From assembly GCA_051530055.1 (NCBI GenBank), contig CM121342.1:13717480-13781479 (forward strand): a stretch of DNA of 64,000 nucleotides, read 5' to 3'. Below the pieces are notes generated by a model, which was not told the origin of the DNA, made no database searches, and saw only the letters and a program-made list of their open reading frames with translations. This DNA is from Neoechinorhynchus agilis. Its lineage: Eukaryota; Animalia; Acanthocephala. Each line of letters opens with the position of its first letter. Within the stretch, counting starts at the first letter, position 1. This document shows, in pieces, positions 37,281-62,156 of this stretch. A program made the translations under genes and the position numbers.

Positions 37281-37980
37281 ATGTGTTGCTGCAAATTGTC
37301 TAGACTGATTTCGTTGGTCTTAAATTTAACTCTGTTTATCAGTTCGATGGTTATGCTCACCGCGGCTTTCGCAATTATCTACAAGTCCGAGCCGGATCAA
37401 GCCGCGGAAGGAATAAAGGAAATTGGTATTGCATCAAGTCAACAACTCATAATCCCACTCTTGTTCGTTGGTGGATTATACGCTACAATTTCACTTATTG
37501 GGGTAATCGGTGTTATCGTCAACAGTGGATGTGTCCTGAGATTTCATTCAACAATACTCGTTGTGTTAATAGCATTTCAAAGTACAGGTATCATTGTCGG
37601 TCTTACACAACGAGACCGTCTAGCGCGGAGTTGTAGTGCTTACATTGAAGAGGTAAGTACCGTAATTCAACATTTCGTTTTTCTTATTCTTATATAAAAA
37701 ATAGATCGAAAAATCACTTATAAACCCTTTCAAAAAGAAAAACAATTGGACAAAGGCAATCGAGAGTTCATTTAATTGTTGTATTGGATCATTGGGTCTT
37801 AACATTTGCTTACCTCCAAAAGTTGAGAGCTGTAGAATAGTCGTTCCTCGATTCGTTCAAGAGCAAATGCCAGTGATGGTGATCGCTGGCGTTGTTTTGG
37901 TAGCCGCCGAGGCTATAATGATTTGCTTGTCTTTGAGAATCGCCAGGAAAAATAATTACAATAGAATTGCTGAACCTTAA
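37281..37980 (+). CDS. Tetraspanin, 2 exons
   Basis: Three N-terminal TM segments, then an intron (GTAAGT at ~37653 to AAATAG at ~37704), an EC2 loop FNCCIG...C...C, a fourth TM and a short tail. Confidence 0.8.
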
Positions 37981-38678
37981 AAAGTAAACTTTTGTTCGCG
38001 ATTATTCGGTATCTTGAAAAGCTCTGAATTTTGCGCGTATTTATGGCTAAAATTTTACTTGTAATATTTTCGCTTGATATCAGGAATAGTATCATTATAC
38101 CGATCCGTAATGTCATCTAAGCGCGAGTTTTAGATTGTACATGAAACCCACACATGTCGAAATTGGAGCTTCTTCTACCAGTTTATTGTAGTTATTCTAA
38201 ATGTTTTCTTCTCGTATTGATCGAAACTTGAAGCAAATGAGGGTGAAAATCTTAAGTAGTTCTCAAACAGCCCATCACTCTTCTCAAGTGGTCCTAGCAA
38301 TTTTTAAATCGGAACATAGCCAAGCTTGTGTTGTTGCTCTTTTCCATTGCGGTTTTGACTGCATATTCATGAAACCAAACTCAATCACGTTTCAATTGGA
38401 AAATTTATCTTAATTTCTAAGTACAACGATTTGTACGTTCACCATTATCACGTTCTCACATCACGGAATATGCTTGTCTGAGCAACAGATTGGTGGTTTA
38501 ATGACTTTTTTATGGAGATCCCTCCCTTCCACCTAGCAGTAATTTACGCAAATATCTCAGTGCAGATGGGCCATATGAGCATTCTGCTGGAAAGCGTAAT
38601 CACAACTGCTTTGAAAACCCATATCCTGTTCGCTACATCCACTTATATATTCCTTTTACTAAACTATTATTTGCAGCA

Positions 38679-40592: not shown

Positions 40593-41367
40593 GATTGTTT
40601 TAGAGTCAATTTGGCATCTCACAAAAGGCGCAAACTGAACGGGCGACGTGGTTTCAGGCGGGGTTAACGTTCGATCCCAATTGATCTCTGAGTACAAGTG
40701 AAAATGGTCATAAAATACCTGCAACTTTAGAATTCGCATTTTTCTGAGCTTCGGTCTCACCTATGCATGTTAATGCATAAAAAATCCTCCATGCTTCTCC
40801 TATCGCTCAAAAGCCTCGTCAAAGAAACGTTATGGTTTGGAACACTTAAAGAATAGACGTATTTAGTTAATAGTTTACTATTATTGCTAAGCACTATTTT
40901 TCGGGTTTCTTTAACTAGAGATTGCGTAAAGGTAAAAGATAGCAAACTCCTTTACATTGTTCTAAATGTTTCCTCTGTGCCAATGCTCGTTTTAGATTCA
41001 AATTTAATATTTGATAGCAACCTAAATAAATTGAGATAATGAAGGACCGTAATATAGCAATACTGAATCGGCTAATAGAATTTAATTTTTACATACCATG
41101 CAGAGTTCGGCAATAAAGAAAATTTTGGGAAAATACCTGCTTCTCAAACATGTGAAGCCTCATCCAGGAAATATGCACACAATGCAAACCACAAAGCCTG
41201 TAATGCTTCCAGTTTCTTAATATTCACCTCAAAAACGTCATTATTTTTAAGCTTTGTTTTTGCAATTGAATGTACCTATAAATACGAGTGTTTAGTGTCT
41301 TAGACAAGATCTCTATTCGCTCATCAAACGTTTACTTTTCCTTCGGTTAAAACGGCAATCTTTCGCA

Positions 41368-44300
41368 ATGAACTTATTATCAGGGCGAGCATCATTAGCG
41401 GTACAGACACTGCGTAGAAGTGGTATTCTATCATCGGCGAACTATATCAATGATTTGTACCTTAGATGGATGGAAGATCCCAAGAAAGTCCATCCGGTAA
41501 GTCTTTACTCTCGTTTTCTATATTGATTTTCCCCCTAGTCGTGGAACAAATATTTCAACAAAGAAGCGCCTCGGTTAACCATCAATGAAACTTCCTCTAC
41601 TGAAATCGAACGCTATATGGCACTCAATGACCTAATCGCATCCTATAGAGTAAGCGTTCCTCTTTTCTCAAATCCGAATATTTTTTAAAGAGTTTCGGAC
41701 ATCGCGCTGCTTCAATAGACCCACTTGGGTTGTCAAGAGCAGACAATCTGCCAGCTCCTCCATACGGACTCGATCCATCCAGTTTCCAAATTCCACCTGA
41801 AATGAAAGTCTTCGGTTTCGACAATAGATTTAAAACTGTGGACGAGCTCGTCAAATTTTTAAAGAGAGTATATTGTGAAACAGTGGGAGTTCAATATATG
41901 CATTTAAGCAATAATGAGATGCGTGATTGGATTCGGCAGAGAATCGAGGCTGATTACAGAGTGCTTGATGAGGAATCACGTTTGGTCGGTTTAAAAGATC
42001 TTATGCGGGCATCATTGTAAGTGCAATTTTGGCTTAAATAATCCTAAGTGATGAAAACTTCTGGGTAGATTTGAAGACTTTGCAGCTCAAAAATTAAGAT
42101 TTCAGACAGCATTCTATGCAAAGGGATGTGAATCGTACATCCCTGCTTTAAGTCATGTGATCAACCAATCAAATCGACTTGGAGTAGAAGACTTTGTGAT
42201 AGGAATGGCCCATAGGTACCTTCTCCAGTGTTTGTATCTTTTTTATATCCCTATAACAGAGGTCGTCATGCAATATTATGCAACATTCTCAATTGTGAAC
42301 TGTCTGATTTTTTTAAGCTTTTCAAGCAAGACCTTAAATTGCCAGACGAGGTGAGTTTTTATTTTCCTTACACTATTTCGGCATTTTTCGCTAGAACATT
42401 GGTGACTCCAAATACCACCTCGGGGGGTACTATGAAGGAGTAAACAAGGAAACAGGAAAGCCTATTCGGATATCGCTTCTATCGAACGCGTCCCACCTAG
42501 AATGTATGTATTTACAGACACTTAAACCGAAGCCATTTTCTGTTGATTAGCGGTGTCTTCGGTAGCTCAAGGACGTGTGACCGCTTTACAACACGAATCC
42601 GGCGACCTGAAAGGCGACAAAAGTCTTTGCATCCTTGTTCATGGAGATGCAGCTCTTGCTGGTCAAGGAGTTGTCTACGAATACACACAAGCAACACACG
42701 TTCCTCAATTCACAACGAATGGAATCGTTCACATTGTGTGCAACAATCAACTGGGATTTACGACCGAGCGTTCAATCTACAGTTCTACTGCTTACAGTAC
42801 AGACGTGCTGCGCGCTGTGGATACTCCTGTGTTTCATTTGAACGCCGAGGACGTTGATTCTGTTCTGTTTGCAAGTAACCTGGTAGCAGAGTTTAGGAAC
42901 GTATTTAGAAAAGATGCGGTAGTCGATGTTGTAAGACAAGAATCTCATCTCTAAGCTGCAATAAACATAACCATGGAACCTTCAACAATTGTGCCAAGAA
43001 ATCATTCCCTGGGCGAAATTAAGGTGTATTCAGTTTTTAGAAGATGCCCAATATTATCGTTGATTACGACTTAAATGTAACAGCTTCGAGTGATTCGTAA
43101 TGTCTTAGCACGGTTAAGGATTTTAGATCACATTCGTTGATAGTCGAGTAGCGTATCACATTGTTGATTAACAAATGTTGCAATTTATGATTAACTGTAA
43201 AAATACATATCATTATAAAAGAATGAGATTCTTGTCCGAGGTTACCGGAAATTCGGTCATAATGAAGTCGACGATCCAACGGCTACACAACCAATAATGT
43301 ATAAAAAAATACAAAATCAAGAACCAGTACTGAGCTTATATAGCGAAAAGTGCATCTCCGATGGTCTGATATGTCGCTCCGAATATGAGGTTAGCTTGAA
43401 AACTCAATTTTTAATCTATAGCAATTTTAAAAAGAAATGGGTTCGTGACTTTCAACAAAAGCTGTCCATGGCATACGAAGCTGCAGAAAAGGAAAAGTCA
43501 CCAAAGGACAAGATTTGGCTTGATGTTCCTCCATGTGATGGTAAAACTTTGTATCGTCGAACATTTTAACTTAGTCCTTGAGCAGCTTCTTCAAAACGAT
43601 CGATGGAACAAACCGGAGTTGAAAAAGAAGTACTGGATAGTATCACCAAGACTGTGTGGGGTTCACATGATGATACGTCGTTTCATATGCAAAAATGTAA
43701 GGTTTCATTTAGTGATTGATCATTAACGCTTTTGTTGTAGCTGTTTCTCGGCTATTTTCTAATCGATTCGATACATACACAAAGAGCGGCGAGATTGACT
43801 TTGCGATGGGTGAGACGCTCTCGTTTGGATCAATCTTATTGGAAGGGATAAACATCCGTATAACCGGCCAGGACAGTGAAAGAGGTGCTTTTGCGTAAGT
43901 TTGGAGAGTGTTAGAATTGTCAAAATGAGCACATCCTGATTTAGGCACAGACACTTTGTGCTTCACGACTTTGAAGATTTTAACAAAAAACGTGTACCAT
44001 TAAAAGAACTTCCCGGAAAGTGTGGGACCTTCGATGCAATTAATTCTCCTTTATGCGAGAATGCAATCCTAGGTAAGTTTTCCTTAGGCGCCTGTATCGA
44101 GAAATTCGTTTCCTCGTCAGCGGCGAATATTACCATAAAAAGCCTCGCTTTTGAAAGTAAATTTGTAGAACGATTGAACATTCACTTTGGCAAGAATTAT
44201 CAGTTTGTTTATCACCCTTAGTCGGATTTGAATTTTTAGTAACTTCCCTTTTTAACATTAGGCCACCAATATGGATATTCTCTTCACCGCCCGGGAACAC

Positions 44301-45253
44301 TATGCATTTGGGAAGCTCAATATGGTGATTTTGCCAACAATGCCCAATGTCTAATCGATCAGTACGTTGTGAGTGGTGCAGCAAAATGGCACCACGAATC
44401 TGGTTTGATTATGTTGCTACCGCATGGCTTAGATGGTGGAGGACCTGAACACAGCTCAAGTCGAGAAGAGCGGTATTTACAAGTAAGTTTGTTTTAAGTG
44501 TCTAAAAATTTTAATGGCATTCTTCGATAAAGATGACAAACGAGCCTAACGATCGGACTTATTCACGAATAGAAGACATCAACTTCTTTTTGGTGAACTG
44601 CACTACAGCAGCAAACTACTTTCATATGTTCCGAAGACATGCCTACATGGGCTTACTAAGGCCACTCATTGTAATGTCACCGAAAACCCTTATAAGATTT
44701 CAAAAAGCGAATTCTCCCATCATTGATATCATGCCAGGTTTGTGCCGTTTTTGTTATGTAAAATCACAATTTTTCATTTGACAGGGACGAGATTTCAAAA
44801 AGTGATTGACGAGGAGTATGACGGATCATCGAAAAAGGTCATATTTTGTAGTGGGAAAGTTTTCTATGATTTAAAGAAAATGATGGTCTTCGTCGGTCTA
44901 AAGTTCGATCATCATTAATACAGGAGAAAAGAAATTCACTTTCGCTTACACCTACCGACGTCCGAATCGTCCGAATAGAACAAATTACCCCTTTTCCGTC
45001 GAATGAAGTAAAAAAGATCTTGAGCAAAAATATGGAAGCACGCAAAATTGTCTGGGTGCAAGAGGAATCCTTGAATATGGGTGCTTTCTTTTACGTTCAA
45101 CCAAAAATTAATCGACTGATTGAAACAGTTGGTGGTAAACGAAGTATTGGATGTGTGTCAAGGGATGTGTCATGTGTACCTGCCACAGCCAATAGCATCA
45201 GATTCAATGAACAAAAAGAGCAACTCCTTCGAGAAGCATTGGGAGATTCATAA
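41368..45253 (+). CDS. OGDH: 2-oxoglutarate dehydrogenase E1 component, mitochondrial, multi-exon
   Basis: [124 protein letters not shown]. Exons can be joined by short GT-AG introns. Confidence 0.95.
42935..43236. mobile_element. ~300-bp element with perfect 14-bp TIRs forming an OGDH intron
   Basis: GACAAGAATCTCAT (42935-42948) and ATGAGATTCTTGTC (43223-43236). Confidence 0.75.
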
Positions 45254-45571
45254 GGCTCATGAAGACACGAAATAAATTAATTTTTGCAAAAGATTGTGTT
45301 CATCGGTGTATTGCTATTGAGATGCGAATGATTGAGAAGGGATGCGGTTGTGCATTGTTTAATATTATACTAAGAAAATTTGGATTTTTAACAATCATAT
45401 AAAGAAAATCCTTCGGGATGATCGTGTTAAAATTGTAGTGAAGATACTCATGGTTAAAACGTCGCATCATCAGTCATTGTTTAAGCGTTGTATTCGCATG
45501 CCTCCTTACGAAATGTTTCGCAAAAATCAAATACGTTTTAACCGGGCTATAATCATCAATACTACAGTCAG

Positions 45572-48500
45572 CCGGGGGGGAACGAGTCCGTTCCTCCACG
45601 TGGTGTCCATGGAAATTACGCTCGGGAATCCAGCTGGGTGCTAAGCTAAACGCGGACCACCTCTGGTGACAGACCCCTTCGACAGGTCGACCAACGGGTC
45701 TATTTAAAACATCGTCGCTATTTCATGAACTAATGCTTTCCAACAAATCGCGAACCGGAACTAAGGAATTCACTGCATTCGACGCGATGGGGCGGGGCCC
45801 GGCCCTATCGAAAAGTGATATAGGGTTCCAGTGGCAAGGACGGCCCTCTGACGTAATCAAACTAGTCCGAAGAAAAACAAAAAGAACGATAATTTAAGCA
45901 TCGGATCGCTGAACGCAGGCACTTCAACGGGCAATACCGAAGAGCTGGGTAAGATGTTAAGAAAAAGGCGAGTGGATATATGCGCTATGCAAAAGACACG
46001 ATGAAGTGGCGCAAAGGCACACGATATGGAACAAGAACGAGATGAGAACGGATACAAACTATTTTACGGTGGTACAAGGGGCACACATAATCGAGTTGGG
46101 ATCGCAATCTCCGAACGATTTCGGGAGGATTCAGTACAAGAAGTACATCGCTTCGATGACCGCATGATGAAATTGACCCTAATCTTGCCTCAGAGGAAAT
46201 TTCACTTCTATTCTGCATATGCGCCGCATACCGGGCTTGGAGATCACGAAATAGAGAAACGTTTTGGGAATGCTGGATCATCGCATACGTGAAATTCCTT
46301 CTGAAGATTAAAGAAGCGGACAAAAATCGTTCCCACGGTGGAAAAGGATTTGGTAAGAGAAACATTGATGGAGAACGAATCCATAAGTTTGCTGACTCAC
46401 ATGACCTCATCATCGCAAAGACCGACCCAACTCCCAAAGTACTATAATGGCAATACAGTCTCGCAAATAGATTTTATTCTCTTTCGACGACGCTACATGT
46501 CTACGATTACAGATGCGAAGGCTGTTCCGCTTGAGACGATTACTGCTCAACACCGACCGATAATAGCGAACAACCGTATAAAACCCCCAATAAAATGATC
46601 GAGTGGCTTCGGTGGCGATTCAAAGAAAAGGAAACGATCCTTACAGGGAAAACAAAAAATTGCCGATTGCGACCACAGTGGACGAAACTTGGAACCGAGC
46701 AAAAGATATCATTCAGGTCGAGGCTCCAAAACACGTGGGTGTCACTAAAGCCGGAAAGCAGAACATTGATCGCGACCCTTGGCTCTGAAGTCAAAAAGAA
46801 GGTTCATGAGAAGAGAATGTATCATGTATTCCTCAAAAGTAAAACGCCTGCAGCCTATGAGAACTATCAAACTGCGAAAAAACAGACAAAAGCAGTCGCG
46901 TCCGCTCGAGCTGCCCACCAAGCACGTGTAAGTAATAAGCCAAATATTCGTGAAAATGACCGTGAGTTATATCGACTCGTAAAACGGCATCAACGGCAGA
47001 TGCAAGATATTGAAAAGTTTCCGTGTATAAATGATAAGCCGGGCGTGCTGATTGTCAATAAAGGTGATGTATCCGAGATAGGTGGCGTCAATACTACGAA
47101 CAGATTTCAAACGAGGAATTTGAGCATCAATCCATTTCGGAGATCGTAAGGATTCCCGGCCCCGTTAGTTCTATCAATACGAAGGAAGTTCAAGATGCAA
47201 TAAATCGAATGAAACCAGGGAAAGCAACCGGCCCTGATGATATAGGATCGGAACCCAGGAAGGCAAAGAACTTCCAGCCGTCATCGTGGTTGACCCGATT
47301 TTTCAACAAAATCATCGAGGAGAAAACAATGCCGATTGACTGGGAGCTCAGTCACACGGTGCCGATATGGAAAAAGAAAGGCAATCCAGCAGAGTGCTGA
47401 AACTACCGCCCGATCAGACCCCTGTCACATACAATGAAAATATTTAAGCGTGTCATCGACAAGCGGATTCGCACTATCGTCGATTTATCCGTTAATCAAG
47501 CTGGATTTGTCAAAGGATGTGGCACCACAGATTCGATTCATGTAGCACGACTGCTTATCGAAAAGTATCGCCGATTCATTTGACATTTATTGACCTAGAA
47601 AAAGCTTTCGATCGAGTACCACACGAGTTGATTTGGTATGCAGTCCGTCAACACAAAATCCCTGAACAGTTGATCGAATGGGTCACATTGCTCTACCGAA
47701 ATCCAAAGAGCCGTGTCAGGAATGTGGCAGGAATCTCAAAATCATAGCCGATAAGCGTTGGAGTTCATCAGGGAAGTGCACTGCCGCCTTTACTGTTTAT
47801 CCTAGTAATGGATGCGATAACTTCAGATATCCAACGCCCAGCGCCGTTCACGATACTGTATGCCGATGACGTTCTCCTAGTATCTGAAGACAAAGAGGAG
47901 CTTCAAAGAGTGGTCCAAGTATGGAGAGACAGATTGGCGAGATTCGGTTTAAAGATGAACCTGACGAAAATACAATATCTAACAACCGATCAACAAACGA
48001 AAAGACACATTTAACACAGACAAAATCAATTTGCCGCGCGCGTTGACCACTTCAAATACCTAGGGTCGACAATATCAAATGACCGCGATCTATAGTGGGA
48101 AATAACAAATAGAATCAGCGCAACTTGGATGAAATAACGGTCAGCAACTGGCGTCCTGTGTGATCGGTGAATCAAGACGCGCCTCAAGTCGAGGATTTAT
48201 TGCTCAGTAGTTCGCCCGTGGCACTATATGGAGCCGAATGCTGGCCAATCATCAAGAACGACGAACATCGCCCAAGCGTCATGGAGACAAAGATGCTAAG
48301 ATGGATAAGCGGCATCACATTGTCCGACCATGTCAATCAGGCGACGACATTCGAAATCGCTTCGGTGTTATGCAGATCAAGGATAAAATGCGCGAGGCCC
48401 GACTGAGATGGTACAGTTATTCGCTGCGTGCAAATGGGACCTCTCTCGCGAGGAAAGGATTGACCGTCGAAATTGACGGAAGGCGCCCAAGAGGCAGACC

Positions 48501-48649
48501 AAAGCAACGCTGGTTAGACACCCTACACGTGGATCTTAGAGAATCGAAGCTGCGCCCAGACCAGGCTCTCGATCGGGACAAGTCGAAGCAAAAGTCCCTA
48601 ACAGTCGACCCCGCCTCCAAACGGAAAAAAGGCTAAGAAAAAGAGGAAG
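45572..48649 (+). mobile_element. Full-length RTE-clade LINE with an 11-bp target-site duplication; ORF disrupted
   Basis: TSD ACTACAGTCAG at 45561-45571 and 48650-48660. APE motifs (GSLNAGT, SAYAPH), RT motifs (DLEKAFDRV, LYADDVLL), RGRPKQRW and an AAG-rich tail. Confidence 0.9.
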
Positions 48650-48905
48650 ACTACAGTCAGATGGGATTCATTGTGCACCAAAAAGTGGTCATCATTTAAT
48701 TGAATTTAATAATATCATCGATACCAGTATTGGTGGATTTGAATTAAAATACTCACAAGTTTAGCAAAGCTTGTAATGACTAAGCACCTATTCCAATCTT
48801 GTAATGACCACTACAATATTCGGTGCCTAAAGAAACATCACTGCAAAGAAAAATATATCTTATTTTCATGAACGATAAAAAATATACACGTTATCAGGCT
48901 CAAAT

Positions 48906-51900
48906 TTAGCTGAAAAAGTATCTAGAGTTCAGAACGGCGTTGAGATCAAACGCGTTGGAACCTACTGCTTGCTTTGGATAATTTCTGATAAGGTTATCAA
49001 CAACATAAAATACGCGATTTGTCGAGGCATCGTTTCGCTCGATTCTGTTTGAGTTGTAAATAGTCCTTAAAAATTGATGACTCAGATCATCGAGAATGTT
49101 TTGAGAGTGCAATTTCACAAATTGTTTTCTGCAGATCTCATTGAGCACTTTAACGTCTGCTGCGTGAGTCCAATAGCTATCATGAACCGACACAAACGTT
49201 ATTCCAGCCCGATGACACTCGATTGCCGTCATCATCATGTGAGTAGAATCAAGAGAATGAACAAAATTGGGTGGCATAGCACTAGCTTGTTTCCTCGGAT
49301 CACTTTCAATTATGTTTCCAGAACTTTTTTTATTCTACGAATTCGTTTGTCAAGCACGGCGAATTCGTGGATTAGTGTAGGGCTGAACAACCGTAAATCC
49401 AAGAGGAGTTATCCATTCTGTCAACCTCCCTCCTATCTGACTAGTTACCCTTGCACACAAACTTAGCCAATCTTGAATGAGCTTTGCACTGGAAAACATT
49501 TCTCCCAAAACCACAAAGGTTTTATCAGCCACGTAATCAGTTGCATCACTCAAATACTCGGACGGAAATCCGGATTCGAGTAATCGTCTACTGATTTGGC
49601 GGTGCGCTCCATATAGAGTAACCCCATAAACAGCCGTCATTACAGTTTGCTTTACTAATTTCCTAGACACAAAGCCATTTAATCGTCGAGCAATGTCAAT
49701 ACCCGCTTGATCAGCATCTACTTTTCTATGCTTTTCCAAAAACTCGGCTACTCGAGAATACACATCTTGAGGATGATCACTTGGAAGAAGATTCACAGCA
49801 GCTGCTCCTTCCAGGTCGCGACCCATCGCGGCATAATGTTGAAGAACGTTACAAGATCCATCTTGATGAACAGGGAAGTGAGACATAAACGACTCTGGAT
49901 TCCGAGATTCAATTGCACGCGATATTTCCATACAACATGCTAATGTTTGCCAGGGATTTTCGGATCGCTGCCACCATCCGCGACCGTCAAGGGGATGTTT
50001 AGCAGAATCCAATATTTCTCCAATCATCTCATCAGCGAAAACCTCGCGCTCATCCAATGAACAATGTTTTTTGAGTTCTGTCAAATTTACCAAATGAATT
50101 TTTAACCAACGAAGACCGTTTTTTCCGAGTGGTTTTGGTTCGGCGAATTTGATCAGAGCTCTACTCACATCACATCCGAGGTGATTGAAATGCGGAGGAG
50201 TCGCATAAACACGCCCTCGAAAATCCATGTTATGAGCGAAAAAAAACGGTTGATAATGGTGTAGGAAATGCTTTGCTACTGACAATCTATAAAATTCATT
50301 ACACCATAGACTATAACTCTCCGCTCGGATTTTTCTGATTTCTTCTCTTGACCTCAGGACGCGTCGTTTTTCATTGAGGGATAAATCTTTTCGTATCGGA
50401 GGTAATGGTGGAAGGTGGTCGTTCTTCGAAGGGATTTTAAGATTTGCCGGTCCTCCATGCTGAAACACATGTAAGGCGATGTCTAAAATGTGTTCATTGA
50501 TATTCCATGGAACACTGCTCACTATATTAAGCGCTTCTAAAACTCGGTCATCGCATTTGTTATCTTTATTGAAATCGAACTGCGATCTTACCATTGATAT
50601 CTGATATATAAGAAGCCCACCGCGATTTGGGGCAGTCCACGGCACTGGTCTACATGTCATTGGGAGTTGTGAGCAATGCATACGAAGTGATTGATTACGT
50701 TGATCGCTCTTGGAAATTACTTTATTTCAGGAATAAGGATTTCAAAGTTGACTATCCAAGCCCCTGAACTAGGATGGACTTTTATCTGCGTCTCGGTGAA
50801 TTCACCAGGAATTCGATTAATTCGATAAAGTACAGGTACATTTTTTACACTCTCACCGCTATTCATATCGACTTTCAAAGATTTTATCATCAAGTCAAGA
50901 AGCTGAAGTCCCAATTTAACCTTAAGAGAATATGGGAAGCAAAATTCGCTTATTGCGAGATTTGTATTGTTTACTAAACAAGCATTCTGCCATTTTTGAT
51001 AAAAGGACGAGTTTTGAGACAAACTTGATTCATAGGTCCGGAAAACGTTCTCCAAATCCTTTATATAGTTTACAGACTTTTGCTTAAACAAAAGCATATG
51101 TTTGCACTCAAGTTGATCACCCAACTCAACCGCAAGTTGCCGCATTGGAAGAGAATAGTAGGGAGATTGGTTCAGGAGGTTCATATTGAGAAGATTCATC
51201 ATCAGATCCACGTATTCGATCGGTGAAAATGTCTCGAAGAACGGTAGTAGGGGCAGTTGTTCCGATCTCAGAGATTTCTCTTCAGCTTTTCGAATTTGCT
51301 TCATCAACAAAAATCCTGCTAGGAGCTGTGAGCGAAAGGCGCCCTCAAACTCACTTCCATTAGATGTGGTACCTTCACTCGTTTGAAATAATGGATCGAT
51401 ATCTTCGAATCCACGGATTTCAAGATCAAGTTGACGCTTACATTGACGATTTTTGTCTGCCTTTTTAAGTATTACAATCAAATATCCTAAGTAGAGGCTC
51501 ACGATTTTTTTAAATAAAGAAATTCGACTAAGCACTTTCATGGTAAATTCAATAGATTGTGCAAATCTTTGCGATCCAAAAGGTTTGCATCACAAAATAG
51601 CAAATGCGCTGACTAATTTAGAATTTAATATGAACCAAATATTTTCTATTTCCGAAATCGATAATAAGAAGCGAAATATAGACTAAGTTCATTAGTTCCG
51701 CCACCCCAGTGTCGATTTTCCGGTGCGAAAAATTTGGCGGAACAAAAACCAATCACATAAATTGTTTTGTGGATTGGCTATGAAATGAATCGTCGTCGAC
51801 TGGTTCGTTTGATCCATTAGTAAGATAGATGCTATTATCATCTGAGCCAACGACCATGAACATGTTTCTGATCCCGTGTATTTGTTCAACGGTCAATATA

Positions 51901-52577
51901 TTTGTAAGAGAATAAATATCCTTTTGGAGATTAAATCCTTTTGATTTTAGTTCGGCCAGCAGTAGTTTCATCATTCCTGACAAATCGCCCGTATTCTTCG
52001 CAGCGGCCATGCATCTAGACAACGAACATAAGGCCGCTGCGTACGAAACCCGATCGGGATCGATATTTTGCTTTTTCATAAATCGAAACAAGGAGACGAT
52101 TCTGTGGAGATTTTCCTGTCCATCACATGGATCATTTGAATAAAACAGCAGGAGCTCATTAAGCGCATTTAATGCGCCTTGATCGATTGCGAATCTTCTC
52201 AAATGTCGATTGGCTTGTCGAGCTTTTGATTTGAGAAGGCAAACCTGAACAAGTGTTTTGAGTTCATCACCCATCGATTTTTTTTCAGGAATCACTGATA
52301 CATCACCAATCGTATGTCGCCTGAACGCTAATATCTCTCGCTTGTTTAAGGTTCGAAGAAGATCTGTGGAGTTTTCGCCCAGTATTTTTTTCCGCGAATT
52401 ATCAGTTTTTCTACCGGTCCGTATCTTTTTTAGACTTTCCACCAAATCAACGTAATCAAAATCAATCGAGTCAAATGTTGGGACACTCTCAGGACGGGTG
52501 CAAATACATCGACAAGTTATCCTTCCTGAGAATTGAATTGAACATAAGTTACGAGCAAAACGAAATGGTGCTTTCAT
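48906..52577 (-). CDS. POLRMT: Mitochondrial (T7-like) DNA-directed RNA polymerase, with two in-frame stops in the specificity loop
   Basis: Targeting-like N-terminus, DFRGRVY, GLRWLKIHLVNL, HQDGSCNVLQHY, RKLVKQTVMTAVYG, PPNFVHSLDSTHM, FVSVHDSYWTHA and C-terminal YFFS*. TGA at 49350-52 and TAG at 49335-37 are in frame. Confidence 0.9.
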
Positions 52578-53199
52578 ATTACATTTAATGGATGTCCAAG
52601 AGTTTTCGACTCTTTAAAAGACAATAAAGCATTCTTTCGTTCGAAGATTGCGGAAACTGTTTGGAAACTTTTAAAACGTGATTTGGATGTCATGTATGTC
52701 AAACCGTTTTGATTTATTCAACTTCAATAGAAACCTGCAAATCAATATTTTTTGTAAGTTGTCGATAATGTCGTTGCATGCTGTTGTTGCGGTTCTTCAC
52801 GTACATCCGCCAACGCGATAATGACTGTCTCATACAAATTATTCGCCTGCCTTCTTCGAATATATCAGTTTGTTTGTACATCCGCCTAATCAACTACATC
52901 CAGTCCGAAGGACACTCCTTATCTGGATTTCCCAATGAAACGATGGTCATATATTATAACTCTCAGATCGAATCCCATGATGCCTAGAGACAGTTTACAT
53001 CAACGTTTTCTCTCTCCGTGGCTAAAAACGATTATAGACAACAAGGAACGTATTAAATCCATATCCTTATTTTGTTGGTAACTTAAAAATATTCTTCAAC
53101 AACAAATCGTTCGGACAACAGTTTGTGGATTTCATATCTTCCCATTGTTTTTAAATAAAGTGGATATCCTCATTTATTGTATCCGGAGTTTCACGTTTT

Positions 53200-54080
53200 T
53201 AAAGCTATAGTCATCGCCCCGGTGGCATGTTATAAACCGCCGTAAATTCCGACATTGGCAACTTGCCGCAGGTCCACGGATTAAGAATTCTGTAATTAAT
53301 ACGGTTTTGGACTCGCTCATTTCATATCCACAATTACATTCTTCACAGACGCTTCAACCTGAAGGCGGCTGACTTTGCCACCCATTGGACATCTAAGAAT
53401 CTTTCCTGTCACAACGGTTCGTCTTTACCTTTCAAAACTACAAATGCCCTCAACAAATCTATTATTCTAGAACTATCCCAACGAATGGTTTCTGCTTAAT
53501 TAGAAGATTAAGCTGAAATAAATGTGACTAAGAGAATCTTTCTAGTGAAAGGCAAACGTAGAGTAGTTTCTTCAGCAAACCAAGTCAGGCCTATTTCTAA
53601 ACAAAATTCTTTGGTTAGTATCTACGAGAGAGCACTTGACATATTTATTTAAGGCTTTGCGTTAAAGCATAATTTCATCGACCGACGCTGTCATGGCTTC
53701 ATTCATAAGAAATATGTGCATACCGCGATAAGAGAGATTATCCACAATTTTACCTAAGAAATATGATCGATGACCATTTTAATTACCTTTGACATATCAC
53801 TAAAGCATTTGATAACGTCGATCTTGACTTCATAGTAAATATTTTAAGATTTTTTAATTTCCCAGCAAACATCATCGCCCATGTCAATAACACTTCAATG
53901 TCCTGGCATCGCAATTCATTGTACAAAACTGTTGAATTTGTCACTCGTTAACCATCTATGCCGATGATCTAACCGTAGTGTTCAAGGAAGCCAATTACAT
54001 TGCTGCTATCTCTACACTATCCTCGCTTTTTACCTTTCTAAACCAAACTGAGTCAAATGAGCCTTGCCATCAATCCCAAA
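53200..54080 (+). mobile_element. Highly decayed non-LTR RT remnant
   Basis: Fragments resembling RPIS, KAFDNVDLDFIVNILRFFNFP and YADDLTVVF in broken frames. Ends uncertain. Confidence 0.55.
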
Positions 54081-54695
54081 CAAGACCAAGTTTATTCTTA
54101 AATCTCCTATTGCGACAAGATGATTTCATCTTTCCACGATTATCCACACGGGACATTATTCACAGAAAGAGGGACAATGCGCGTTTGTGAAATCGTGCAG
54201 CACTTTCAAGAAGTATTTTATTTAGGCAGACGAGATGGTAGCAACGTAAAGTACAGCCTCTCGTAGCAGAGTCGAACAAGGTAAGGAACTACCACGAACA
54301 TGGCCAAACGTCCATTCGGACGAAGATAACTCTCATCCAGAGCCGTTAAATAGGATAAGTTGGAAGATTTCATAACAAACATCCTCACGGTGGTGGATCA
54401 GGGGGACGGAGATCGAAATAATCAAATATTGCGTGGCCCAGATCATTGAGGAGCAATCCAAGGTTTGTGCCTCTGGGTTTCATGAGCTCACCATAAGGCG
54501 AGAATTGCAATGAGACTGTTAAAGTGGAACATCGGGCCGGTTAGGGATATCTCGCTTATTTTCCGATATAGCCAACGCGGATGATATCGCTTTGCTACAA
54601 GAGACAAAACCTATACTCCCCCGACGGTTCCCATGACGGTCTCCGTCGTAGCTTACAGACTCTACCCGAAAAGTAAACAATGTTCATTATCGTGT

Positions 54696-57030
54696 ACGTC
54701 CTCTTCGTCAACGTCCTCTCTCTGGTCAACGTCCTCTCTCAGATCAACGTCCTCTCTCGTCAACGTCCCCCCTCTCGTGAACGTCCAGTTTTTCACTCTT
54801 ATTGATGTTGCACTAAAGAAAATACTTGAACGAGTTACTGAAACTCTAAAGGACTCATTAATTTAAGTGATGAGCACACTTAAGGATATATTAGCGGATG
54901 CTATTCAGTGCGAAATGGGAGCTCTCAAAAATGAAGAGTTGATCGAAGTCAAAGGCGCAAAGGGAACAAAGCTAACGGTTCAAAAAGGCAGGCAAAAGTT
55001 TCAAAGGTGAATACTAAGAAACCGACTAAAGATTTACTGAAATCGGATAGTGAAGCGACCACAAAGGAGAATAAGATTCTGGTAGATTCCATCAGTATGC
55101 TAAAGTCGAATGATGATTTGTTGGAAACGAATGGTGTTCAAAAGATTGCGAATATTTCGACAATTACTAGGGACTTGGTACCATGCTTAGAGGATATTCA
55201 GCCAGTAGTACCTTAGGATTCTAATCTTACTGTTGAAAAGATAATTCATTGTTATTTGTCGATAGGAGAAAATAAATGAAATTTAGATTTTATTGGATAT
55301 TTCGATCCACTATCTCGGATCTTCTTCAGTGATGTGAACACCTTGTGTAAAACTTACCAACAATCGCTGAAGAAGATCTGAGATAGTGGATCGAAATATC
55401 CAATAAAATCTTAATTTCATCTAATCTTACTGCGGAGGAGTATGGTATTTGTGACTGGGATAAAAGGTAACGATAGGAAAAACGGAAGTGATTCAGCTGA
55501 AGTAATTACTATGAAAGCTACGGTCGAACAAAAAGTCAAAGTAATACCTGAACGATTAGAAACAAGAGCAAAAGGTGGAACTCCATCAAAATCAATCAAC
55601 CCTTCGATTTATTTCGGTAATGATACGCCTTCTCCACCCAGGTCATCATCCCTAGTTGCTCTGAATTCGACCCATCGCATCATGCACTTCTCCATCAAGG
55701 ATAGAAATCGCACCATATTTATTTCTGGTATGTCAGAAGCCCCTGTTACAGATCCTGTCGTCGCTTATGCACACAACCGCCACCAAATCCTTCGAATCGG
55801 TCAACTCCTTTTCCCCGGCATTCACTCTACTATTCCTCCCCCACCAACAGTTATGCGCATTCCACCCAAAAATTCGTTTAACCCGAGACAACGTTTCCTC
55901 AAGGTAACTTTTATTTCACCATTCGTAGCCTCCCTCTTTCCTACCAGGAGATACAAACTCCTTACTTCTCATTTTTCTTTTCGCATCTATCCACATAAGA
56001 ACGCATCACAAAATCTTTCCACATGCCCTCCAAACTCAACCCAGAAGTCATCTTCACAATGTAACCCGTCACTTTTAGCAAAAACCCACGAACATCTCCC
56101 CCATCCCAAAAAATGGTAGAATAAGCGACTTACCAGTTTTTTTGATTACGTGCAGCTTAACCGGCACCCGAATAACCACAAAGGTCAATCTCCCAGCCGT
56201 TCTACATTAAATACTCTCCTTTCCCCGAATCAAGTAAATAATTATCTTTTTACCCCTACTCAAAATCACCATAAATCGGCCCATCCAACCGTAGCTGATC
56301 CATGCAAAGTCCCAACCCTAAACTCATTGTTTCAGAAAAGGGCATCCTATTTCGGCCGAATCATTCCGTCCAATTTCCATTCTACCCGCTCTTTTAAAAA
56401 TCACCAAAAAGTGTTTTAAATCTCGCGTTCTTTCACTTCGGCACGAAAAGTTATCGCCTTTCAATTTAGCTTTCGACTCAGATTTTCTGCAACCTATGTC
56501 CTACTTTGCATTTATGACACGCTTCTACGTAACCTCGACAATAATCCCTCCCACTTCACCCGTATCATTCAACTTGATTTATCGAAAGCTTTCGACTCAG
56601 TGGACCATTCACTTCTTCTCCGGGCCTGCACCGATTTTGGTCTCAACTTGCGGCAGATCCACTGGCTCGAATCTTATCTTCACAATCGCAAACAATACAT
56701 TCACTGCCGTTCTACCTCTTCTATCAGCCTATCCCTCTCCAAAGGCGTACCTCAAGGTGCTGTGCTGTCACCACTACTCTAAACTCTTCTTATACGCCTA
56801 CGATATCACCCTCATCACCCATTCACCACCCTACCTCTCCCTTTCTTTAACTTCTAAAGAAATCACACACATAAAAGATTTCTGCACCGATCACAAACTC
56901 CATCTCAATTTCTCTAAATGCTTCGAAATGATCCCCTCTCTCCCGCAACCCCACATCACCCCCTGAGCTTTTAAATGACATCCTACGAATAACCTCCCTA
57001 AGAATTCTGGGTCTATAATTCAAGTGCACG
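54696..57030 (+). mobile_element. Internally deleted CR1/L2-like LINE related to the 1300-6540 element
   Basis: 5' TCAACGTCCTCTCTC repeats (54696-54786). ORF1-like RNRTIFISGMSE...RFLKVTF. LTSFFDYV matches LPSFYDYV near 2000. RT motifs LDLSKAFDSVDHSLLL and GVPQGAVLSPLL. Confidence 0.8.
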
Positions 57031-59243: not shown

Positions 59244-62156
59244 ATGTTACTGTTTGAAAAGAGGATTTTTAGTGCCATTTGTATTTTGCTTTTTTCAGGT
59301 TTGAAGCTTAAGGCAGCGTTGTGTCATTTGAGAGAGAGAAACATTTAGTCAGAATGTCTAATGCCAATCGAGAATGCACTCGAAAATCGGATCCAAGTAG
59401 AGCTTGCAACAAGGAATGTAGATCGGATTCGCATTGCAGTCACAGCCAACGGTGCCTCTGCGACTTTAGTTGTGGAATGTCTTGTATTGCAGCAGGTTTG
59501 CTCGACTCCTGTTTCAGGCTAATCCACTTGTGATGAGACGACTGTTATCTATGAAGCCTTATCTTTTGGAATCTGGGAATTAATCGAAGGCACACTTTAT
59601 ATTTGCGAATGACATACAAGGAATATTACCGGTTTCTTAGAACATCACGACAATTTCAAATTATAATCTCGAAATAATTCGAAAAATGAAAGATAAAACG
59701 ATCTTTTTTGTAACGTAAAGTAGCCAATAGAAATTGGGAAATGATCCTATTGGCTAAATGTTTCTTGTCACTTTTTAATTGTACATTTTCTGTTCAAAAG
59801 GAGGTAGCTCGTGTGCACCTTTTACAATCTGGGAATTAATCGAAGGCACACTTTGTATTTGCGAATGACATCCAAGAGAATTACTGGTTTCTTGGAACAT
59901 CAAGACAATTTCAATTTATAATGTCGAAATAATTCGAAAAATGAAAGATAAAACGATCTTTTTAGTAACGTAAAGTAGCCAATAGAAATTGGGAAATGAT
60001 CTTATTGGCTAACTTTTTCTTTGCACCTTTTGATTGTGCCTTTTCGTTTTAAAAAAGGTAGCTCGTGAGCACTAATGGCAGTCATCACATTGCAACCGGG
60101 TTTATACTTCTAATTCGTTCATAATTCAAATGTTAGCAGATATGTTTGATCTTTGCCAGATACCGACCTCACCAATCTCTGGCTTTGTAAATTTCACAAA
60201 CCTGGGATACTTCAAGTCGCTAGCCACGTTCTACTGCGACGAAGGTTATTCGCTATACGGTCCAAGCACAAAAATTTGCCAAGGAGATGGATGGTTCTGG
60301 CCAATTGATGATTCCGTTTGTATACCCGACGGTATTTCCTTTCCTCGCTCTCATTTCCAATCGTACAAAATGTTTTCGGGCCAGTCTTATGTGATCCTCC
60401 ACCGCGAATAAGTGACTCCAGTATACAATCGGCAAATTCGCCCTTTATACCCGGATCAACTGTAATTTATGTATGCAATGAGGGATTCGAAGTCAATCGG
60501 TAAGTCGCGATAGAAGTAGTTCTAGAATTATTTTTTATGTCGATGTTCTTGCCTAAAGCGAAGTCAAAAATTTGTAACGATTCCAGAATTTAAATAAAAA
60601 TTAGAGGTGACAGTGGGTTGCTTATATCACGGAGGACAATAAAGTGTTTAATTTTTGGTCAGTTTTATTTAGACTACTTAATAATTTAAAGAATAGGTTG
60701 CTTGAAGCAGTTATTGATTTCTCAAAAATACGTACTTTAGAAAAGGTGAAACGAGATTCTCGATATACTGCACATCCAAAGGACAATGGATCGGACTTCG
60801 ACAGTTTTGCATAAGTAATGGATTAAATCTGCCTGCTTGTATATAACGCCATCTAATAGGAGCTGGTTGCAAGGTGCCGTCGGATGATAAGATGTATATT
60901 CACCCAGATTATGAAAGCAACGTTCAACAAGGGACTCGACTACAAGTGCAATGCAAATCCGGCTATAAATCAGCAGACCCAACTCCAGTAAAAGTCATCA
61001 CCTGCACTCCTACTGGATGGGATAATGACTTTCTCAGGTGTGAAGGTTCCTGTATTCTTCTACTTTACGCAAAAACCAATACCGACTGTTTCAACTAGAA
61101 ATCAACGACTGCATCGCACCTGACATCCCAGAAAACTCGGCATATTTGTCTGAGATATATCCCGGTGATAGAATAAAGCACGGATCCATTGAAGAAATCA
61201 GGTGTATTTTTGACGGAACTTGGGACAATAATTCCGCTTTTTTTGTCGGTTGCAATGACGGTCGAATTTATCACAACATCACCCAGTGTGTAAAAAAAGG
61301 TTTGCTTTAAAGCCCTCTGGAAATTTTCATCTAAGTCCAAATGTACAGAACCCGCGTGTATTGTACAGTTATATGATGGAGTCATCTATCAGTCTCACGA
61401 TATTGGGGATATTCTTAGAATAGGAGAATCTTTCTCTTACACCTGTGAACAGGCAAATCCCCAGTCTATGAGTTTTTGTGTCAAATCGGGTGATTTGTCT
61501 CCCTTGCCTACATGTAATAAAGGTGAATTTGTGCATGATTTCTTGCGATCGAAACATAGATTTTGCTACGCAGGATGTAAATCAGCTCCTCCAATGAGTC
61601 ATTGGGCATGGCCAATCTATTTGTCTACTCAACACGGTGCCACTGCCCACTACGAATGCTTCGCTGGTTACAGATTACAAAATGAATCAATTAAATCAAT
61701 TACATGTAACAACGGGAAGTGGACACGACCAGTTCCCAAATGCGTCCCAGGTTTGATGTTCAGCTTTTTCCTTTAAGTCTTTAGTTTATCCCGAAGCTCG
61801 CTGTCAAATGATCGAAACCGTCCACGATCCTCATCTTTTGGTGTGGCTGAGTGATACCCTTGTAAAAAGGAGCGATTATGACAATCGAACGTTTGGTCCT
61901 GGCATTAAACTGAAATTTGAATGCGAATTAGGTAAGCACTACGAGGACCCTTTCTGTATTTATATTGTACTACGAGCAGGATATCGCTTGATAGGCCCCA
62001 TTGAAGTAGAGTGTACAAATGGACAATGGTATCCATTGGCACAAACAAGTTGCGCTAAAAGTAGGAGTGATATGATTGGTTTTCTTTTAAAAATCAACTA
62101 ATCTAGGTGAATACCCGTTTGGGGATGACCGATTTATTGTTTTGATACCACAATAA
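59244..62156 (+). CDS. Secreted WAP + ~7 CCP/sushi domain protein (LEV-9/Hasp-like)
   Basis: Signal peptide MLLFEKRIFSAICILLFS, WAP-like CTRK...CNKECRSDSHCSHSQRCLCDFSCGMSC, then repeated C-P...C..G(Y/F)...C...W...C modules in successive exons. No TM segment. Confidence 0.8.
59570..60073. repeat. Tandem duplication, 2 x ~256 bp, in an intron of the LEV-9-like gene
   Basis: The unit AATCTGGGAATTAATCGAAGGCAC... starts at 59570 and 59826. Confidence 0.9.

What the first reader, a model, noticed from the sequence alone, without database searches (positions are those of the whole stretch)
49275..49385. Two in-frame stops in the POLRMT specificity loop, inside a hairpin
Seen: VVQPYTNPRIRRA[TGA 49350-52]QTNS[TAG 49335-37]NKKSSGNIIESDPRKQASAMPPNFVHSLD is one continuous frame in an otherwise well-conserved polymerase. 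The only GT before the TGA gives no in-frame AG that keeps RKQ. On the mRNA strand ACGAATTCG…CGAATTCGT forms a 9-bp stem with UGA in the 14-nt loop and UAG at its base. From recalled sequences, the TAG falls at the conserved loop Gln (yeast ETNLQ, plant RTSLQ, human GGGIQ, 14 residues after PY as here). The essential motif C (HDS) lies downstream. Inference: possible recoding (double readthrough, A-to-I editing of both stops to Trp, or a 21-nt GC-AG micro-intron); otherwise a young pseudogene or an assembly error.
Basis: partly seen in the sequence, partly recalled or inferred. Interest (0 to 1): 0.75.

Follow-up and report, generated by a model that had tools for sequence, protein, structure and literature searches.

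The report
Two stops in worm POLRMT loop
The only mitochondrial RNA polymerase gene of the parasitic worm Neoechinorhynchus agilis carries two in-frame stop codons in its promoter-reading loop in the deposited assembly; this is most likely a local sequence error that the public annotation hides behind an invented intron, and only the raw reads can settle it.

Summary
On the minus strand the reading frame runs VVQPYTNPRIRRA-TGA(49352-49350)-QTNS-TAG(49337-49335)-NKKSSGNIIESDPRKQ. A perfect 9-bp hairpin puts TGA in its loop and TAG at its base.

The window is Neoechinorhynchus agilis (Acanthocephala), GCA_051530055.1. This is a MaSuRCA Illumina + Nanopore R9.4 hybrid assembly of pooled worms. 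The paper describes short-read polishing only for the rejected Flye assembly.

The gene is the only POLRMT found in the annotated proteome. Apart from these 18 bases its reading frames are open and its catalytic motifs are present. Both stops map into the specificity loop (human residues 1085-1108).

The public model (ACOME3_007953) removes them with a 57-nt GT..AG "intron". That stretch encodes the near-invariant VVQPY, has exon-like composition, and has weaker splice sites than 21 real introns in the window. I read it as a gene-finder patch.

The +1 frame is open across both stops, and an A7 run follows the TAG. Two 1-nt indels would therefore restore an intact loop.

Best explanation: a local consensus error (about 0.5). 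Rivals: a real null allele or hairpin-templated mutation (0.2), recent intronization (0.1), recoding (0.05). No reads were available, so nothing is proven.

The parts
48906..52577 (-). POLRMT gene of Neoechinorhynchus agilis, from start ATG 52577 to stop TAA 48906-48908. It is annotated publicly as two genes, ACOME3_007954 and ACOME3_007953.
   Evidence: Window 45906-54541 is identical to CM121342.1:13763385-13772020.
51757..52577 (-). Exon 1: presequence-like N-terminus and PPR-like region. The 3' end is the most distal in-frame donor (intron starting at 51756) and is not confirmed.
   Evidence: (PPR_3 only E = 0.0087).
51528..51756 (-). Intron 1, inferred. Canonical in-frame GT..AG solutions of 190, 229 or 259 nt share the donor GTGATT at 51756. 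The acceptor is uncertain.
   Evidence: The annotation splits the gene here instead.
50753..51527 (-). Exon 2 (RPOL_N domain). The 5' end is uncertain.
50709..50752 (-). Intron 2: a real 44-nt intron, GTCAAC...CCAAG.
   Evidence: It is the only in-frame canonical join. It gives exactly the 13-residue spacing between KVHP and LRM that all homologues have. Its composition is intron-like (LLR +0.043, above 97.5% of exon decoys).
48906..50708 (-). Exon 3: the polymerase domain with the two in-frame stops.
49377..49391 (-). Codons for VVQPY. Q, P and Y are at least 90% conserved in POLRMTs. They match human V1078-Y1082.
49350..49352 (-). In-frame TGA, followed by C. It sits in the hairpin loop (CM121342.1:13766829-13766831).
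49335..49337 (-). In-frame TAG, followed by A. Its T is the last stem base (CM121342.1:13766814-13766816).
49337..49368 (-). Hairpin: arms 49368-49360 and 49345-49337, loop 49359-49346. The same 9-mer ACGAATTCG is also a direct repeat at 49368-49360 and 49346-49338.
49325..49331 (-). A7 homopolymer on the mRNA strand, 3 nt after TAG. It is the candidate site of a 1-nt length error. Read in the +1 frame it forms the heptamer A AAA AAA.
49335..49391 (-). The 57-nt 'intron' of the public gene model (GTTGTT...TCGTAG), judged spurious.
49287..49295 (-). Codons for RKQ (human R1113-Q1115), in frame 0 with VVQPY.
49176..49184 (-). Motif C (HDS), downstream of both stops.

Best explanation
The stops are real in the deposited sequence but are most likely not real in the animal. 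A short stretch of the POLRMT specificity-loop coding sequence, roughly 49372-49325, appears mis-called in a hybrid consensus with no reported short-read polishing.

The simplest version is two single-base length errors. One extra base lies before or within TGA, for example TT for T at 49353/49352. One A is missing from the A7 run at 49331-49325. About 9-15 codons, depending on where the extra base lies, would then be read one base out of register. The true protein would read roughly VVQPYTNPRIRRADKRIRRIKKSSGNIIESDPRKQ.

The gene finder (BRAKER2) could not keep an ORF with stops. It spliced out 57 nt (49391-49335), deleting VVQPY and half the loop.

Shown:
- the position of the stops;
- the integrity and single-copy status of the gene in the annotated proteome;
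- the exon-like nature of the 57-nt stretch;
- the open +1 frame and the adjacent homopolymer;
- the assembly method.

Inferred: that the bases are wrong. No reads could be examined.
For: 1. Assembly method. MaSuRCA hybrid of Illumina and ONT R9.4 from a pool of about 50 worms, with Flye as the assembler. The paper's supplement describes short-read polishing (NextPolish) only for the rejected Flye assembly and names indels and homopolymers as the expected errors.

2. The gene is otherwise intact. Open segments of 274, 290 and 458 codons. One well-supported 44-nt intron. Canonical joins exist for the first intron. RNA_pol scores 335 + 147 bits. Motifs A and C are present.

3. It is the only POLRMT among annotated N. 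agilis proteins. It is expected to be essential, because acanthocephalans keep mitochondrial genomes (established knowledge).

4. Both defects lie within 18 nt of a roughly 3.4-kb coding sequence with no other lesion. This points to one local event, not decay.

5. Frame +1 is open across both stops (...HEFAVLDKRIRRIKKV...). The frame-restoring site coincides with an A7 run. In real exons of this window, 32% of 16-codon off-frame windows hold two or more stops. A shifted stretch therefore predicts what is seen.

6. With a 21-nt instead of 22-nt repeat spacing, the loop reads RIRRADK-RIRRIKK. This is a 7-residue tandem repeat whose fourth Arg is coded CGT versus AGA.

7. The annotated 57-nt intron is not intron-like:
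- GC 0.47, against 0.305 +/- 0.05 (maximum 0.39) for 21 introns;
- composition LLR -0.028, matched or exceeded by 33% of 517 exon-internal GT..AG decoys;
- donor -1.4 bits, against at least 3.0;
- acceptor 2.1 bits, against at least 3.2;
- it encodes the conserved VVQPY in frame.
Against: - No read-level data were reachable, so the error is not demonstrated.
- MaSuRCA consensus is mostly Illumina-derived and usually accurate.
- Four other homopolymers of at least 7 nt in the same gene are read in frame, so homopolymer errors are not pervasive.
- The 5' error would fall in a 2-nt run, which is not a typical Nanopore error site.
- Two errors that happen to compensate is itself a coincidence.
- Codon-usage log-odds do not separate frame +1 (2.05) from frame 0 without its stops (1.65).
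- MAFFT places the frame-0 Gln under the vertebrate loop Gln. This mildly favours frame 0 being ancestral, in which case substitutions rather than indels would be the cause.
- The perfect hairpin is not explained by random errors.
Confidence: 0.5

Rival explanations
1. The sequence is correct and is a real loss-of-function lesion. It would be either a null allele carried heterozygously by the sequenced worms or a very young pseudogene. It could have arisen in one step: a hairpin-templated (template-switch) or end-joining event that copied ACGAATTCG, perfected the stem and rewrote the spacer.
For: - The perfect 9-bp inverted repeat, which is also a direct repeat, sits exactly on the stops.
- Inverting the 14-nt loop removes the TGA while keeping length and frame. 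That fits an inverted-repeat-mediated event.
- Clustering of both stops in 18 nt fits one mutational event.
- N. agilis POLRMT differs at 13 of 136 positions invariant in 15 other animals, more than any other species (0-6). This is compatible with relaxed constraint.
- The DNA came from a pool plus single females.
Against: - Motif C lies downstream, so the product would be dead.
- No second POLRMT is annotated, and the enzyme is expected to be essential.
- A recessive lethal allele should be a minority of pooled reads and is unlikely to win the consensus.
- The long intact ORFs exclude anything but very recent inactivation.
- Loop inversion does not remove the TAG.
- The 13 deviating residues are mostly conservative changes (L/I/M, W/F, G/A). 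That looks like fast evolution under selection.
Confidence: 0.2
2. The stops are real and the annotated 57-nt GT..TAG stretch really is spliced out. This would be a recent intronization in a genome whose introns are 42-52 nt and mostly end in TAG. The polymerase would lack VVQPY and the first half of the loop.
For: - The length is a multiple of 3, with GT..AG ends and a TAG acceptor, as in most real introns here.
- 57 nt is within the observed 42-90 nt range.
- Weak donors such as GTTGGT (11973) and GTCAAC (50752) are used in homology-supported introns.
- BRAKER2 was run with RNA-seq hints, so spliced reads may exist.
- In-frame stops in 3n introns are the expected pattern in short-intron genomes (established knowledge from Paramecium).
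Against: - GC 0.47 exceeds that of all 21 real introns.
- Donor and acceptor scores fall below all 21. The composition LLR lies inside the exon-decoy distribution.
- The stretch encodes VVQPY in frame. Q, P and Y are at least 90% conserved, and no other POLRMT in the alignment lacks them. It is, or very recently was, coding.
- Splicing would delete the equivalents of human 1078-1098 from an essential enzyme.
- The same annotation failed to join exons 1 and 2 of this gene. That suggests few splice hints at this locus.
Confidence: 0.1
3. The stops are real and are bypassed during gene expression. Three routes were considered:
(a) readthrough of both stops;
(b) A-to-I editing of both stops to Trp codons;
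(c) a +1 frameshift at GCU-UGA-C followed by a -1 frameshift on A-AAA-AAA, giving ...PRIRRADKRIRRIKKSSG...
For: - UGA is followed by C, the leakiest context known in eukaryotes (established knowledge).
- The hairpin is more stable than shuffles.
- For (c): frame +1 is open between the two sites. In that frame the A7 run forms a correctly phased X XXY YYZ heptamer. P-site codon + UGA + C resembles the antizyme and RF2 +1 sites. The product has a tidy RIRRxxK repeat.
Against: - Two consecutive low-efficiency events multiply to a negligible yield.
- UAG-A is not a leaky context.
- The hairpin encloses UGA instead of following it.
- No structure follows UAG or the A run (z = +0.94).
- A 9-bp stem is too short for ADAR, and both target adenosines are unpaired.
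- The 458-, 290- and 286-codon open frames show the standard code is in use.
- No report of recoding in Acanthocephala was found in the searched literature.
- No relative is close enough to test conservation.
Confidence: 0.05

Closest known systems
Human POLRMT specificity loop (residues 1085-1108; PDB 4BOC, 6ERP, 9MN4) and T7 RNA polymerase specificity loop
   Same: The flanks are homologous: VVQPY matches VIQPY 1078-1082, and PRKQ..PPNFVHSLD matches TRKQ..PPNFIHSLD. The loop length is similar (27 versus 30 residues between PY and RKQ). The region is basic and shaped like a beta-hairpin. E = 6e-40 to human and 1e-9 to T7.
   Different: The worm sequence as deposited has TGA and TAG inside the loop. 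The loop sequence itself is not conserved among animals.
Gene-finder 'rescue introns' over frameshifts or stops in draft assemblies
   Same: A short in-frame GT..AG is placed exactly around the stops. The removed stretch carries conserved coding sequence. The same gene is also split into two models.
   Different: Whether RNA-seq junction reads back this particular intron could not be checked.
Compensated frameshift pair (two opposite 1-nt indels bracketing an out-of-frame stretch)
   Same: The flanks are in one frame. The alternative frame is open between them. There are two stops in a short stretch. One candidate site is a homopolymer.
   Different: The 5' site has no long homopolymer. The evidence for frame +1 is only its openness and a 7-residue repeat pattern.
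Antizyme / RF2-type +1 frameshifting and A-AAA-AAN -1 slippery sites
   Same: Sequence patterns of both kinds are present and correctly phased (GCU UGA C; A AAA AAA).
   Different: There is no downstream stimulatory structure. No precedent exists for a paired +1/-1 event in one loop. No conservation is testable.
Small inversions and template-switch mutations at inverted repeats
   Same: A perfect inverted repeat flanks a short spacer. Inverting the spacer keeps the length and removes TGA.
   Different: TAG is not removed. No ancestral or allelic sequence is available for comparison.

Membership tests
Mitochondrial single-subunit RNA polymerase (POLRMT, T7-like) | Pfam RNA_pol (PF00940) polymerase domain | tested here: met
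   335.1 bits (profile 1-268) plus 146.7 bits (profile 290-447); best non-self hits are animal POLRMTs at 43-51% identity.
Mitochondrial single-subunit RNA polymerase (POLRMT, T7-like) | RPOL_N (PF14700) N-terminal domain | tested here: met
   36.2 bits in exon 2 (cut-off 30.1) and a 26.8-bit continuation in exon 3.
Mitochondrial single-subunit RNA polymerase (POLRMT, T7-like) | N-terminal PPR domain and targeting presequence | tested here: inconclusive
   PPR_3 at E = 0.0087, below the cut-off. Exon 1 (...DPDRVSYAAALCSLSRC) resembles the PPR segment ...SYAAxLECLGR of the homologues, but it is not a row of that alignment. The presequence was judged by eye only.
Mitochondrial single-subunit RNA polymerase (POLRMT, T7-like) | Catalytic motifs A (DGSCN..) and C (HDS/HDC), and the KQ..PPNF.HSLD block | tested here: met
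   All 29 invariant columns of the 130-residue C-terminal segment are kept.
Mitochondrial single-subunit RNA polymerase (POLRMT, T7-like) | Uninterrupted reading frame through the specificity loop | tested here: not met
   TGA 49352-49350 and TAG 49337-49335.
Spliceosomal short intron of this genome (the annotated 57-nt intron 49391-49335) | GT..AG ends, with length in the local range | tested here: met
   GTTGTT..TCGTAG, 57 nt. The 21 reference introns are 42-90 nt, mostly 42-52.
Spliceosomal short intron of this genome (the annotated 57-nt intron 49391-49335) | AT-rich intron composition | tested here: not met
   GC 0.47 against 0.305 +/- 0.05 (maximum 0.39). Markov LLR is -0.028, below 19 of 21 real introns and matched or exceeded by 33% of 517 exon decoys.
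Spliceosomal short intron of this genome (the annotated 57-nt intron 49391-49335) | Splice-site match to the local consensus (GTAAGT...TAG) | tested here: not met
   Donor -1.4 bits (real introns at least 3.0). Acceptor 2.1 bits (real introns at least 3.2). Caveat: part of the reference set was picked by donor motif, and the real 44-nt intron of this gene also scores -1.9.
Spliceosomal short intron of this genome (the annotated 57-nt intron 49391-49335) | No in-frame homology to the protein family | tested here: not met
   It encodes VVQPY. Q, P and Y are at least 90% conserved in 16 POLRMTs.
Programmed stop-codon readthrough | Leaky stop context and a stimulatory structure just 3' of the stop | tested here: not met
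   UGA-C is leaky but lies inside the hairpin loop. UAG-A has no downstream structure.
Programmed stop-codon readthrough | Conservation of the stop and its context in related species | not testable with these tools
   The nearest other POLRMT is 49% identical. No N-terminal homologue was found outside N. agilis.
ADAR A-to-I recoding site | Target adenosine within an extended duplex (roughly 15-20 bp or more) | tested here: not met
   The stem is 9 bp. The A of UGA is in the loop and the A of UAG is outside the stem.
Programmed ribosomal frameshifting (+1 then -1) | Shift-prone sequences in the right phase | tested here: met
   GCU UGA C, and A AAA AAA phased for frame +1 to frame 0. Frame +1 is open between them.
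Programmed ribosomal frameshifting (+1 then -1) | Downstream stimulatory RNA structure | tested here: not met
   the 96 nt after TAG fold no better than shuffles (z = +0.94).
Translational bypassing (T4 gene 60 type) | Matched take-off and landing codons that restore the frame | tested here: not met
   The repeat copies are 22 nt apart. Landing on the second copy enters frame +1, which ends at TAA 49312-49310.

The most novel reading that the evidence does not exclude
The assembled bases are right and the worm still makes a working POLRMT from this single gene. It would do so in one of two ways:
- paired recoding inside the specificity loop (+1 at GCU-UGA-C, then -1 on A-AAA-AAA, or double readthrough);
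- splicing out a freshly intronized 57-nt piece that removes the near-invariant VVQPY motif.
Probability: 0.1. Interest if true: 0.8.

Novelty: not a real feature. Interest (0 to 1): 0.2.

Why it matters
If the stops are an artefact, the practical lesson is about annotation. The public protein ACOME3_007953 lacks VVQPY and half the specificity loop, and the N-terminal third of the enzyme is filed as a separate gene (ACOME3_007954). Comparative studies of gene loss and protein reduction in parasitic rotifers and acanthocephalans would therefore read a mutilated POLRMT as biology.

If the stops are real, an essential, apparently single-copy animal gene would depend on recoding, or on a newly born intron, in the element that reads mitochondrial promoters. 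That would be remarkable.

The data needed to decide already exist publicly (WGS reads, 74 RNA-seq libraries, a Trinity transcriptome).

Tried and rejected
- Exact look-ups of the 443-aa and 123-aa ORFs in public assemblies found nothing. No independent N. agilis contigs, genomic or transcriptomic, are in the collection.
- A chimeric query of eight ORFs, meant to retrieve the other annotated N. agilis proteins and their introns, failed. Myosin homologues filled the candidate list, and one protein search was wasted.
- An unsupervised ORF-bridging search for introns was too noisy. It was replaced by homology-guided and donor-guided picking.
- Codon-usage log-odds, meant to decide between frame 0 and frame +1, have almost no power. 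Nearly all the signal comes from the stops themselves.
- The 21-nt GC-AG micro-intron was rejected. The shortest real intron seen is 42 nt.
- The 72-nt GT..AG (49357-49286) is in frame but removes the invariant K and Q.
- Gene-60-type hopping between the repeat copies was rejected because it lands out of frame.
- A repeat or transposon origin for the 22-nt unit was rejected. It is unique in the window.
- Inverting the hairpin loop removes only TGA.
- The paper's supplement has no entry for POLRMT or introns.
- No literature on recoding in Acanthocephala was found.
- There are no N runs or assembly joins in the window.
Full report
**What the window is.**
The 844-aa protein ACOME3_007953 of Neoechinorhynchus agilis matches the query at 97% over its full length. 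Its locus, CM121342.1:13763385-13772020 of GCA_051530055.1, is identical to window 45906-54541. N. agilis is an eoacanthocephalan.

The genome paper (PMC12690905) describes a 46.2-Mb assembly:
- It was made with MaSuRCA in hybrid mode (Flye option) from Illumina reads, Nanopore R9.4 reads of a pool of about 50 worms, and very few HiFi reads.
- It was then processed with purge_dups and Hi-C scaffolding.
- It was annotated with BRAKER 2.1.5 using RNA-seq.
- The supplement describes short-read polishing (NextPolish) only for the alternative Flye assembly that was not chosen. It names short indels and homopolymers as the expected long-read errors.

**The observation.**
It holds exactly. Frame 0 of the minus strand reads TPLGFTVVQPYTNPRIRRA-TGA-QTNS-TAG-NKKSSGNIIESDPRKQASAMPPNFVHSLD, with TGA at 49352-49350 and TAG at 49337-49335. 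Motif C (HDS) lies at 49184-49176.

The hairpin has a 9-bp stem (49368-49360 pairing with 49345-49337) and a 14-nt loop that contains TGA. It folds at -11.6 kcal/mol, z = -2.67. About a dozen equally perfect hairpins exist in the 64 kb, but only this one lies in the gene.

The core CGAATTCG is itself palindromic. ACGAATTCG is therefore also a direct repeat, spaced 22 nt apart.

**The gene.**
Pfam finds RNA_pol split exactly at the stops (profile 1-268 upstream, 290-447 downstream). RPOL_N lies in the preceding exon.

The HMMER alignment to human POLRMT (E = 6e-40) maps the region as follows:

| Worm | Human |
|---|---|
| VVQPY | V1078-Y1082 |
| TGA | about G1092 |
| TAG | about I1098 |
| RKQ | R1113-Q1115 |

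The human specificity loop is 1085-1108. T1101 and N1103 contact the -4 and -3 template guanines.

In a 17-row alignment the loop is variable in sequence and length, while Q, P and Y before it are at least 90% conserved.

The rest of the gene is sound:
- Exon 1 is open for 274 codons from ATG 52577.
- A 44-nt intron (50752-50709) is the only canonical in-frame join of exons 2 and 3. It reproduces the 13-residue spacing seen in all homologues.
- Canonical in-frame joins of 190-259 nt exist for exons 1 and 2.

The annotation nevertheless splits the gene into ACOME3_007954 (288 aa) and ACOME3_007953. No other N. agilis POLRMT appears in either protein search, and the next best hit is 49% identical.

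N. agilis deviates at 13 of 136 positions invariant in 15 other animals, more than any other species. The changes are mostly conservative.

**How the annotation hides the stops.**
ACOME3_007953 reads ...TEWITPLGFT|NKKSSGNII.... This corresponds to a 57-nt GT..AG intron, 49391-49335 (GTTGTT...TCGTAG).

I collected 21 introns from the myosin heavy chain, 2-oxoglutarate dehydrogenase, sugar transporter and another gene of the window. They are 42-90 nt (mostly 42-52), 30.5 +/- 5% GC (maximum 39%), mostly GTAAGT...TAG.

| Measure | 57-nt stretch | Reference |
|---|---|---|
| GC content | 47% | Exon 3 windows: 42 +/- 6% |
| Composition LLR | -0.028 | Below 19 of 21 introns; matched or exceeded by 33% of 517 exon-internal decoys |
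| Donor score | -1.4 bits | At least 3.0 in real introns |
| Acceptor score | 2.1 bits | At least 3.2 in real introns |

The stretch also encodes VVQPY in frame. The real 44-nt intron of this gene has a weak donor too, but its composition is clearly intron-like (LLR +0.043).

I conclude that the 57-nt intron is a gene-finder patch or, at most, a very recent intronization. One caveat applies: part of the intron reference set was picked by donor motif, so the donor comparison is partly circular.

**What could have produced the stops.**
Frame +1 is open across both stops (...IHEFAVLDKRIRRIKKV..., ending at TAA 49312-49310). The point where it must rejoin frame 0 falls in an A7 run, 49331-49325.

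Removing one base before or within TGA and adding one A gives an intact loop, for example PRIRRADKRIRRIKKSSGNII. This reads as a 7-residue tandem repeat RIRRxxK, with the fourth Arg coded CGT versus AGA.

Off-frame 16-codon windows of real exons carry two or more stops 32% of the time and are open 33% of the time. The pattern is therefore what a shifted stretch predicts, but the openness of frame +1 is only weak evidence. Codon usage cannot discriminate.

Alternatives remain. Inverting the hairpin loop removes TGA but not TAG. Two C-to-T changes (CGA to TGA, CAG to TAG) are also possible. The loop is too variable, and relatives too distant, to recover the ancestral sequence.

**Weighing.**
Real homozygous stops would kill an enzyme that is expected to be essential and appears single-copy. 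Two independent nonsense mutations within 18 nt of an otherwise clean 3.4-kb coding sequence are very unlikely. One local event is needed, either in the consensus or in the DNA.

A draft hybrid consensus from pooled, polymorphic worms, without reported short-read polishing, should contain many local error clusters. A scan for anomalies will preferentially find them. Recoding or newborn introns in essential motifs should be far rarer.

Two points count against the error reading. Four other long homopolymers in the gene are in frame. The hairpin coincidence is not explained.

I put the explanations at:
- local consensus error: about 0.5;
- real null allele or single-step mutation: 0.2;
- real splicing of the 57 nt: 0.1;
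- recoding of any kind: 0.05;
- unassigned: the remainder.

**Recoding tests.**
- UGA-C is a leaky context, but the stop sits inside the hairpin loop rather than 5' of a structure.
- UAG-A is not leaky.
- The 96 nt after TAG fold no better than shuffles.
- The 9-bp stem with both adenosines unpaired is not an ADAR substrate.
- Hopping between the repeat copies lands out of frame.
- The +1/-1 frameshift pair has correctly phased sequence motifs but no stimulators and no precedent.
- No literature on recoding in Acanthocephala was found.

**Verdict.**
The recoding interpretation is not supported. The existing WGS and RNA-seq data would settle it quickly.

Noticed in passing
window 51541-52620 (minus strand): The N-terminal third of POLRMT (presequence-like start and PPR-like region) is annotated as a separate 288-aa gene, ACOME3_007954. 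That model ends at TGA 51755-51753. The main model starts at an internal ATG (51541). Canonical in-frame GT..AG joins of 190-259 nt exist, so this is probably one gene.
   Followed up: partly
window 14526-14577 (plus strand): A homology-supported GC-AG intron (GCATGT...TTTTTAG, 52 nt) lies in the myosin heavy chain gene, between ...CIDLIEK and [10 protein letters not shown].
   Followed up: partly
window 11400-20450, 37250-40600, 41400-45300 (plus strand): Myosin heavy chain, a sugar transporter and 2-oxoglutarate dehydrogenase E1 show the intron regime of this 46-Mb genome. Introns are 42-52 nt and about 30% GC, with GTAAGT donors and mostly TAG acceptors. A few homology-supported donors are weak (GTTGGT at 11973, GTAACT at 11783).
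   Followed up: partly
window 2900-6200, 46000-48640, 55400-57000: Decayed LINE-type reverse transcriptase / endonuclease fragments (RVT_1, Exo_endo_phos_2). One abuts the 3' end of POLRMT on the opposite strand. The 4001-6000 bin has a GC skew of -0.48.
   Followed up: no
POLRMT protein (exon 3), e.g. codons for DGSCNVLQHY: N. agilis POLRMT differs at 13 of 136 positions invariant in 15 other animals, against 0-6 for every other species. One change is G to V next to the motif A aspartate. The changes are mostly conservative, so this looks like fast evolution rather than decay.
   Followed up: partly
window 59721-59756 and 59976-60011: The same 9-10-bp hairpin (TAGCCAATA...) occurs twice, 255 nt apart. 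This indicates a local repeat.
   Followed up: no
window 7450-10341 (plus strand): A calpain-family protease gene (Peptidase_C2). An upstream ORF in the same frame is separated from it by a single stop at 7858-7860. The upstream ORF does not look coding.
   Followed up: partly
window 21155-23261, 27201-27920, 34240-34812 (minus strand), 29340-30050 (plus strand): Several long ORFs (191-303 codons) have no Pfam match.
   Followed up: no
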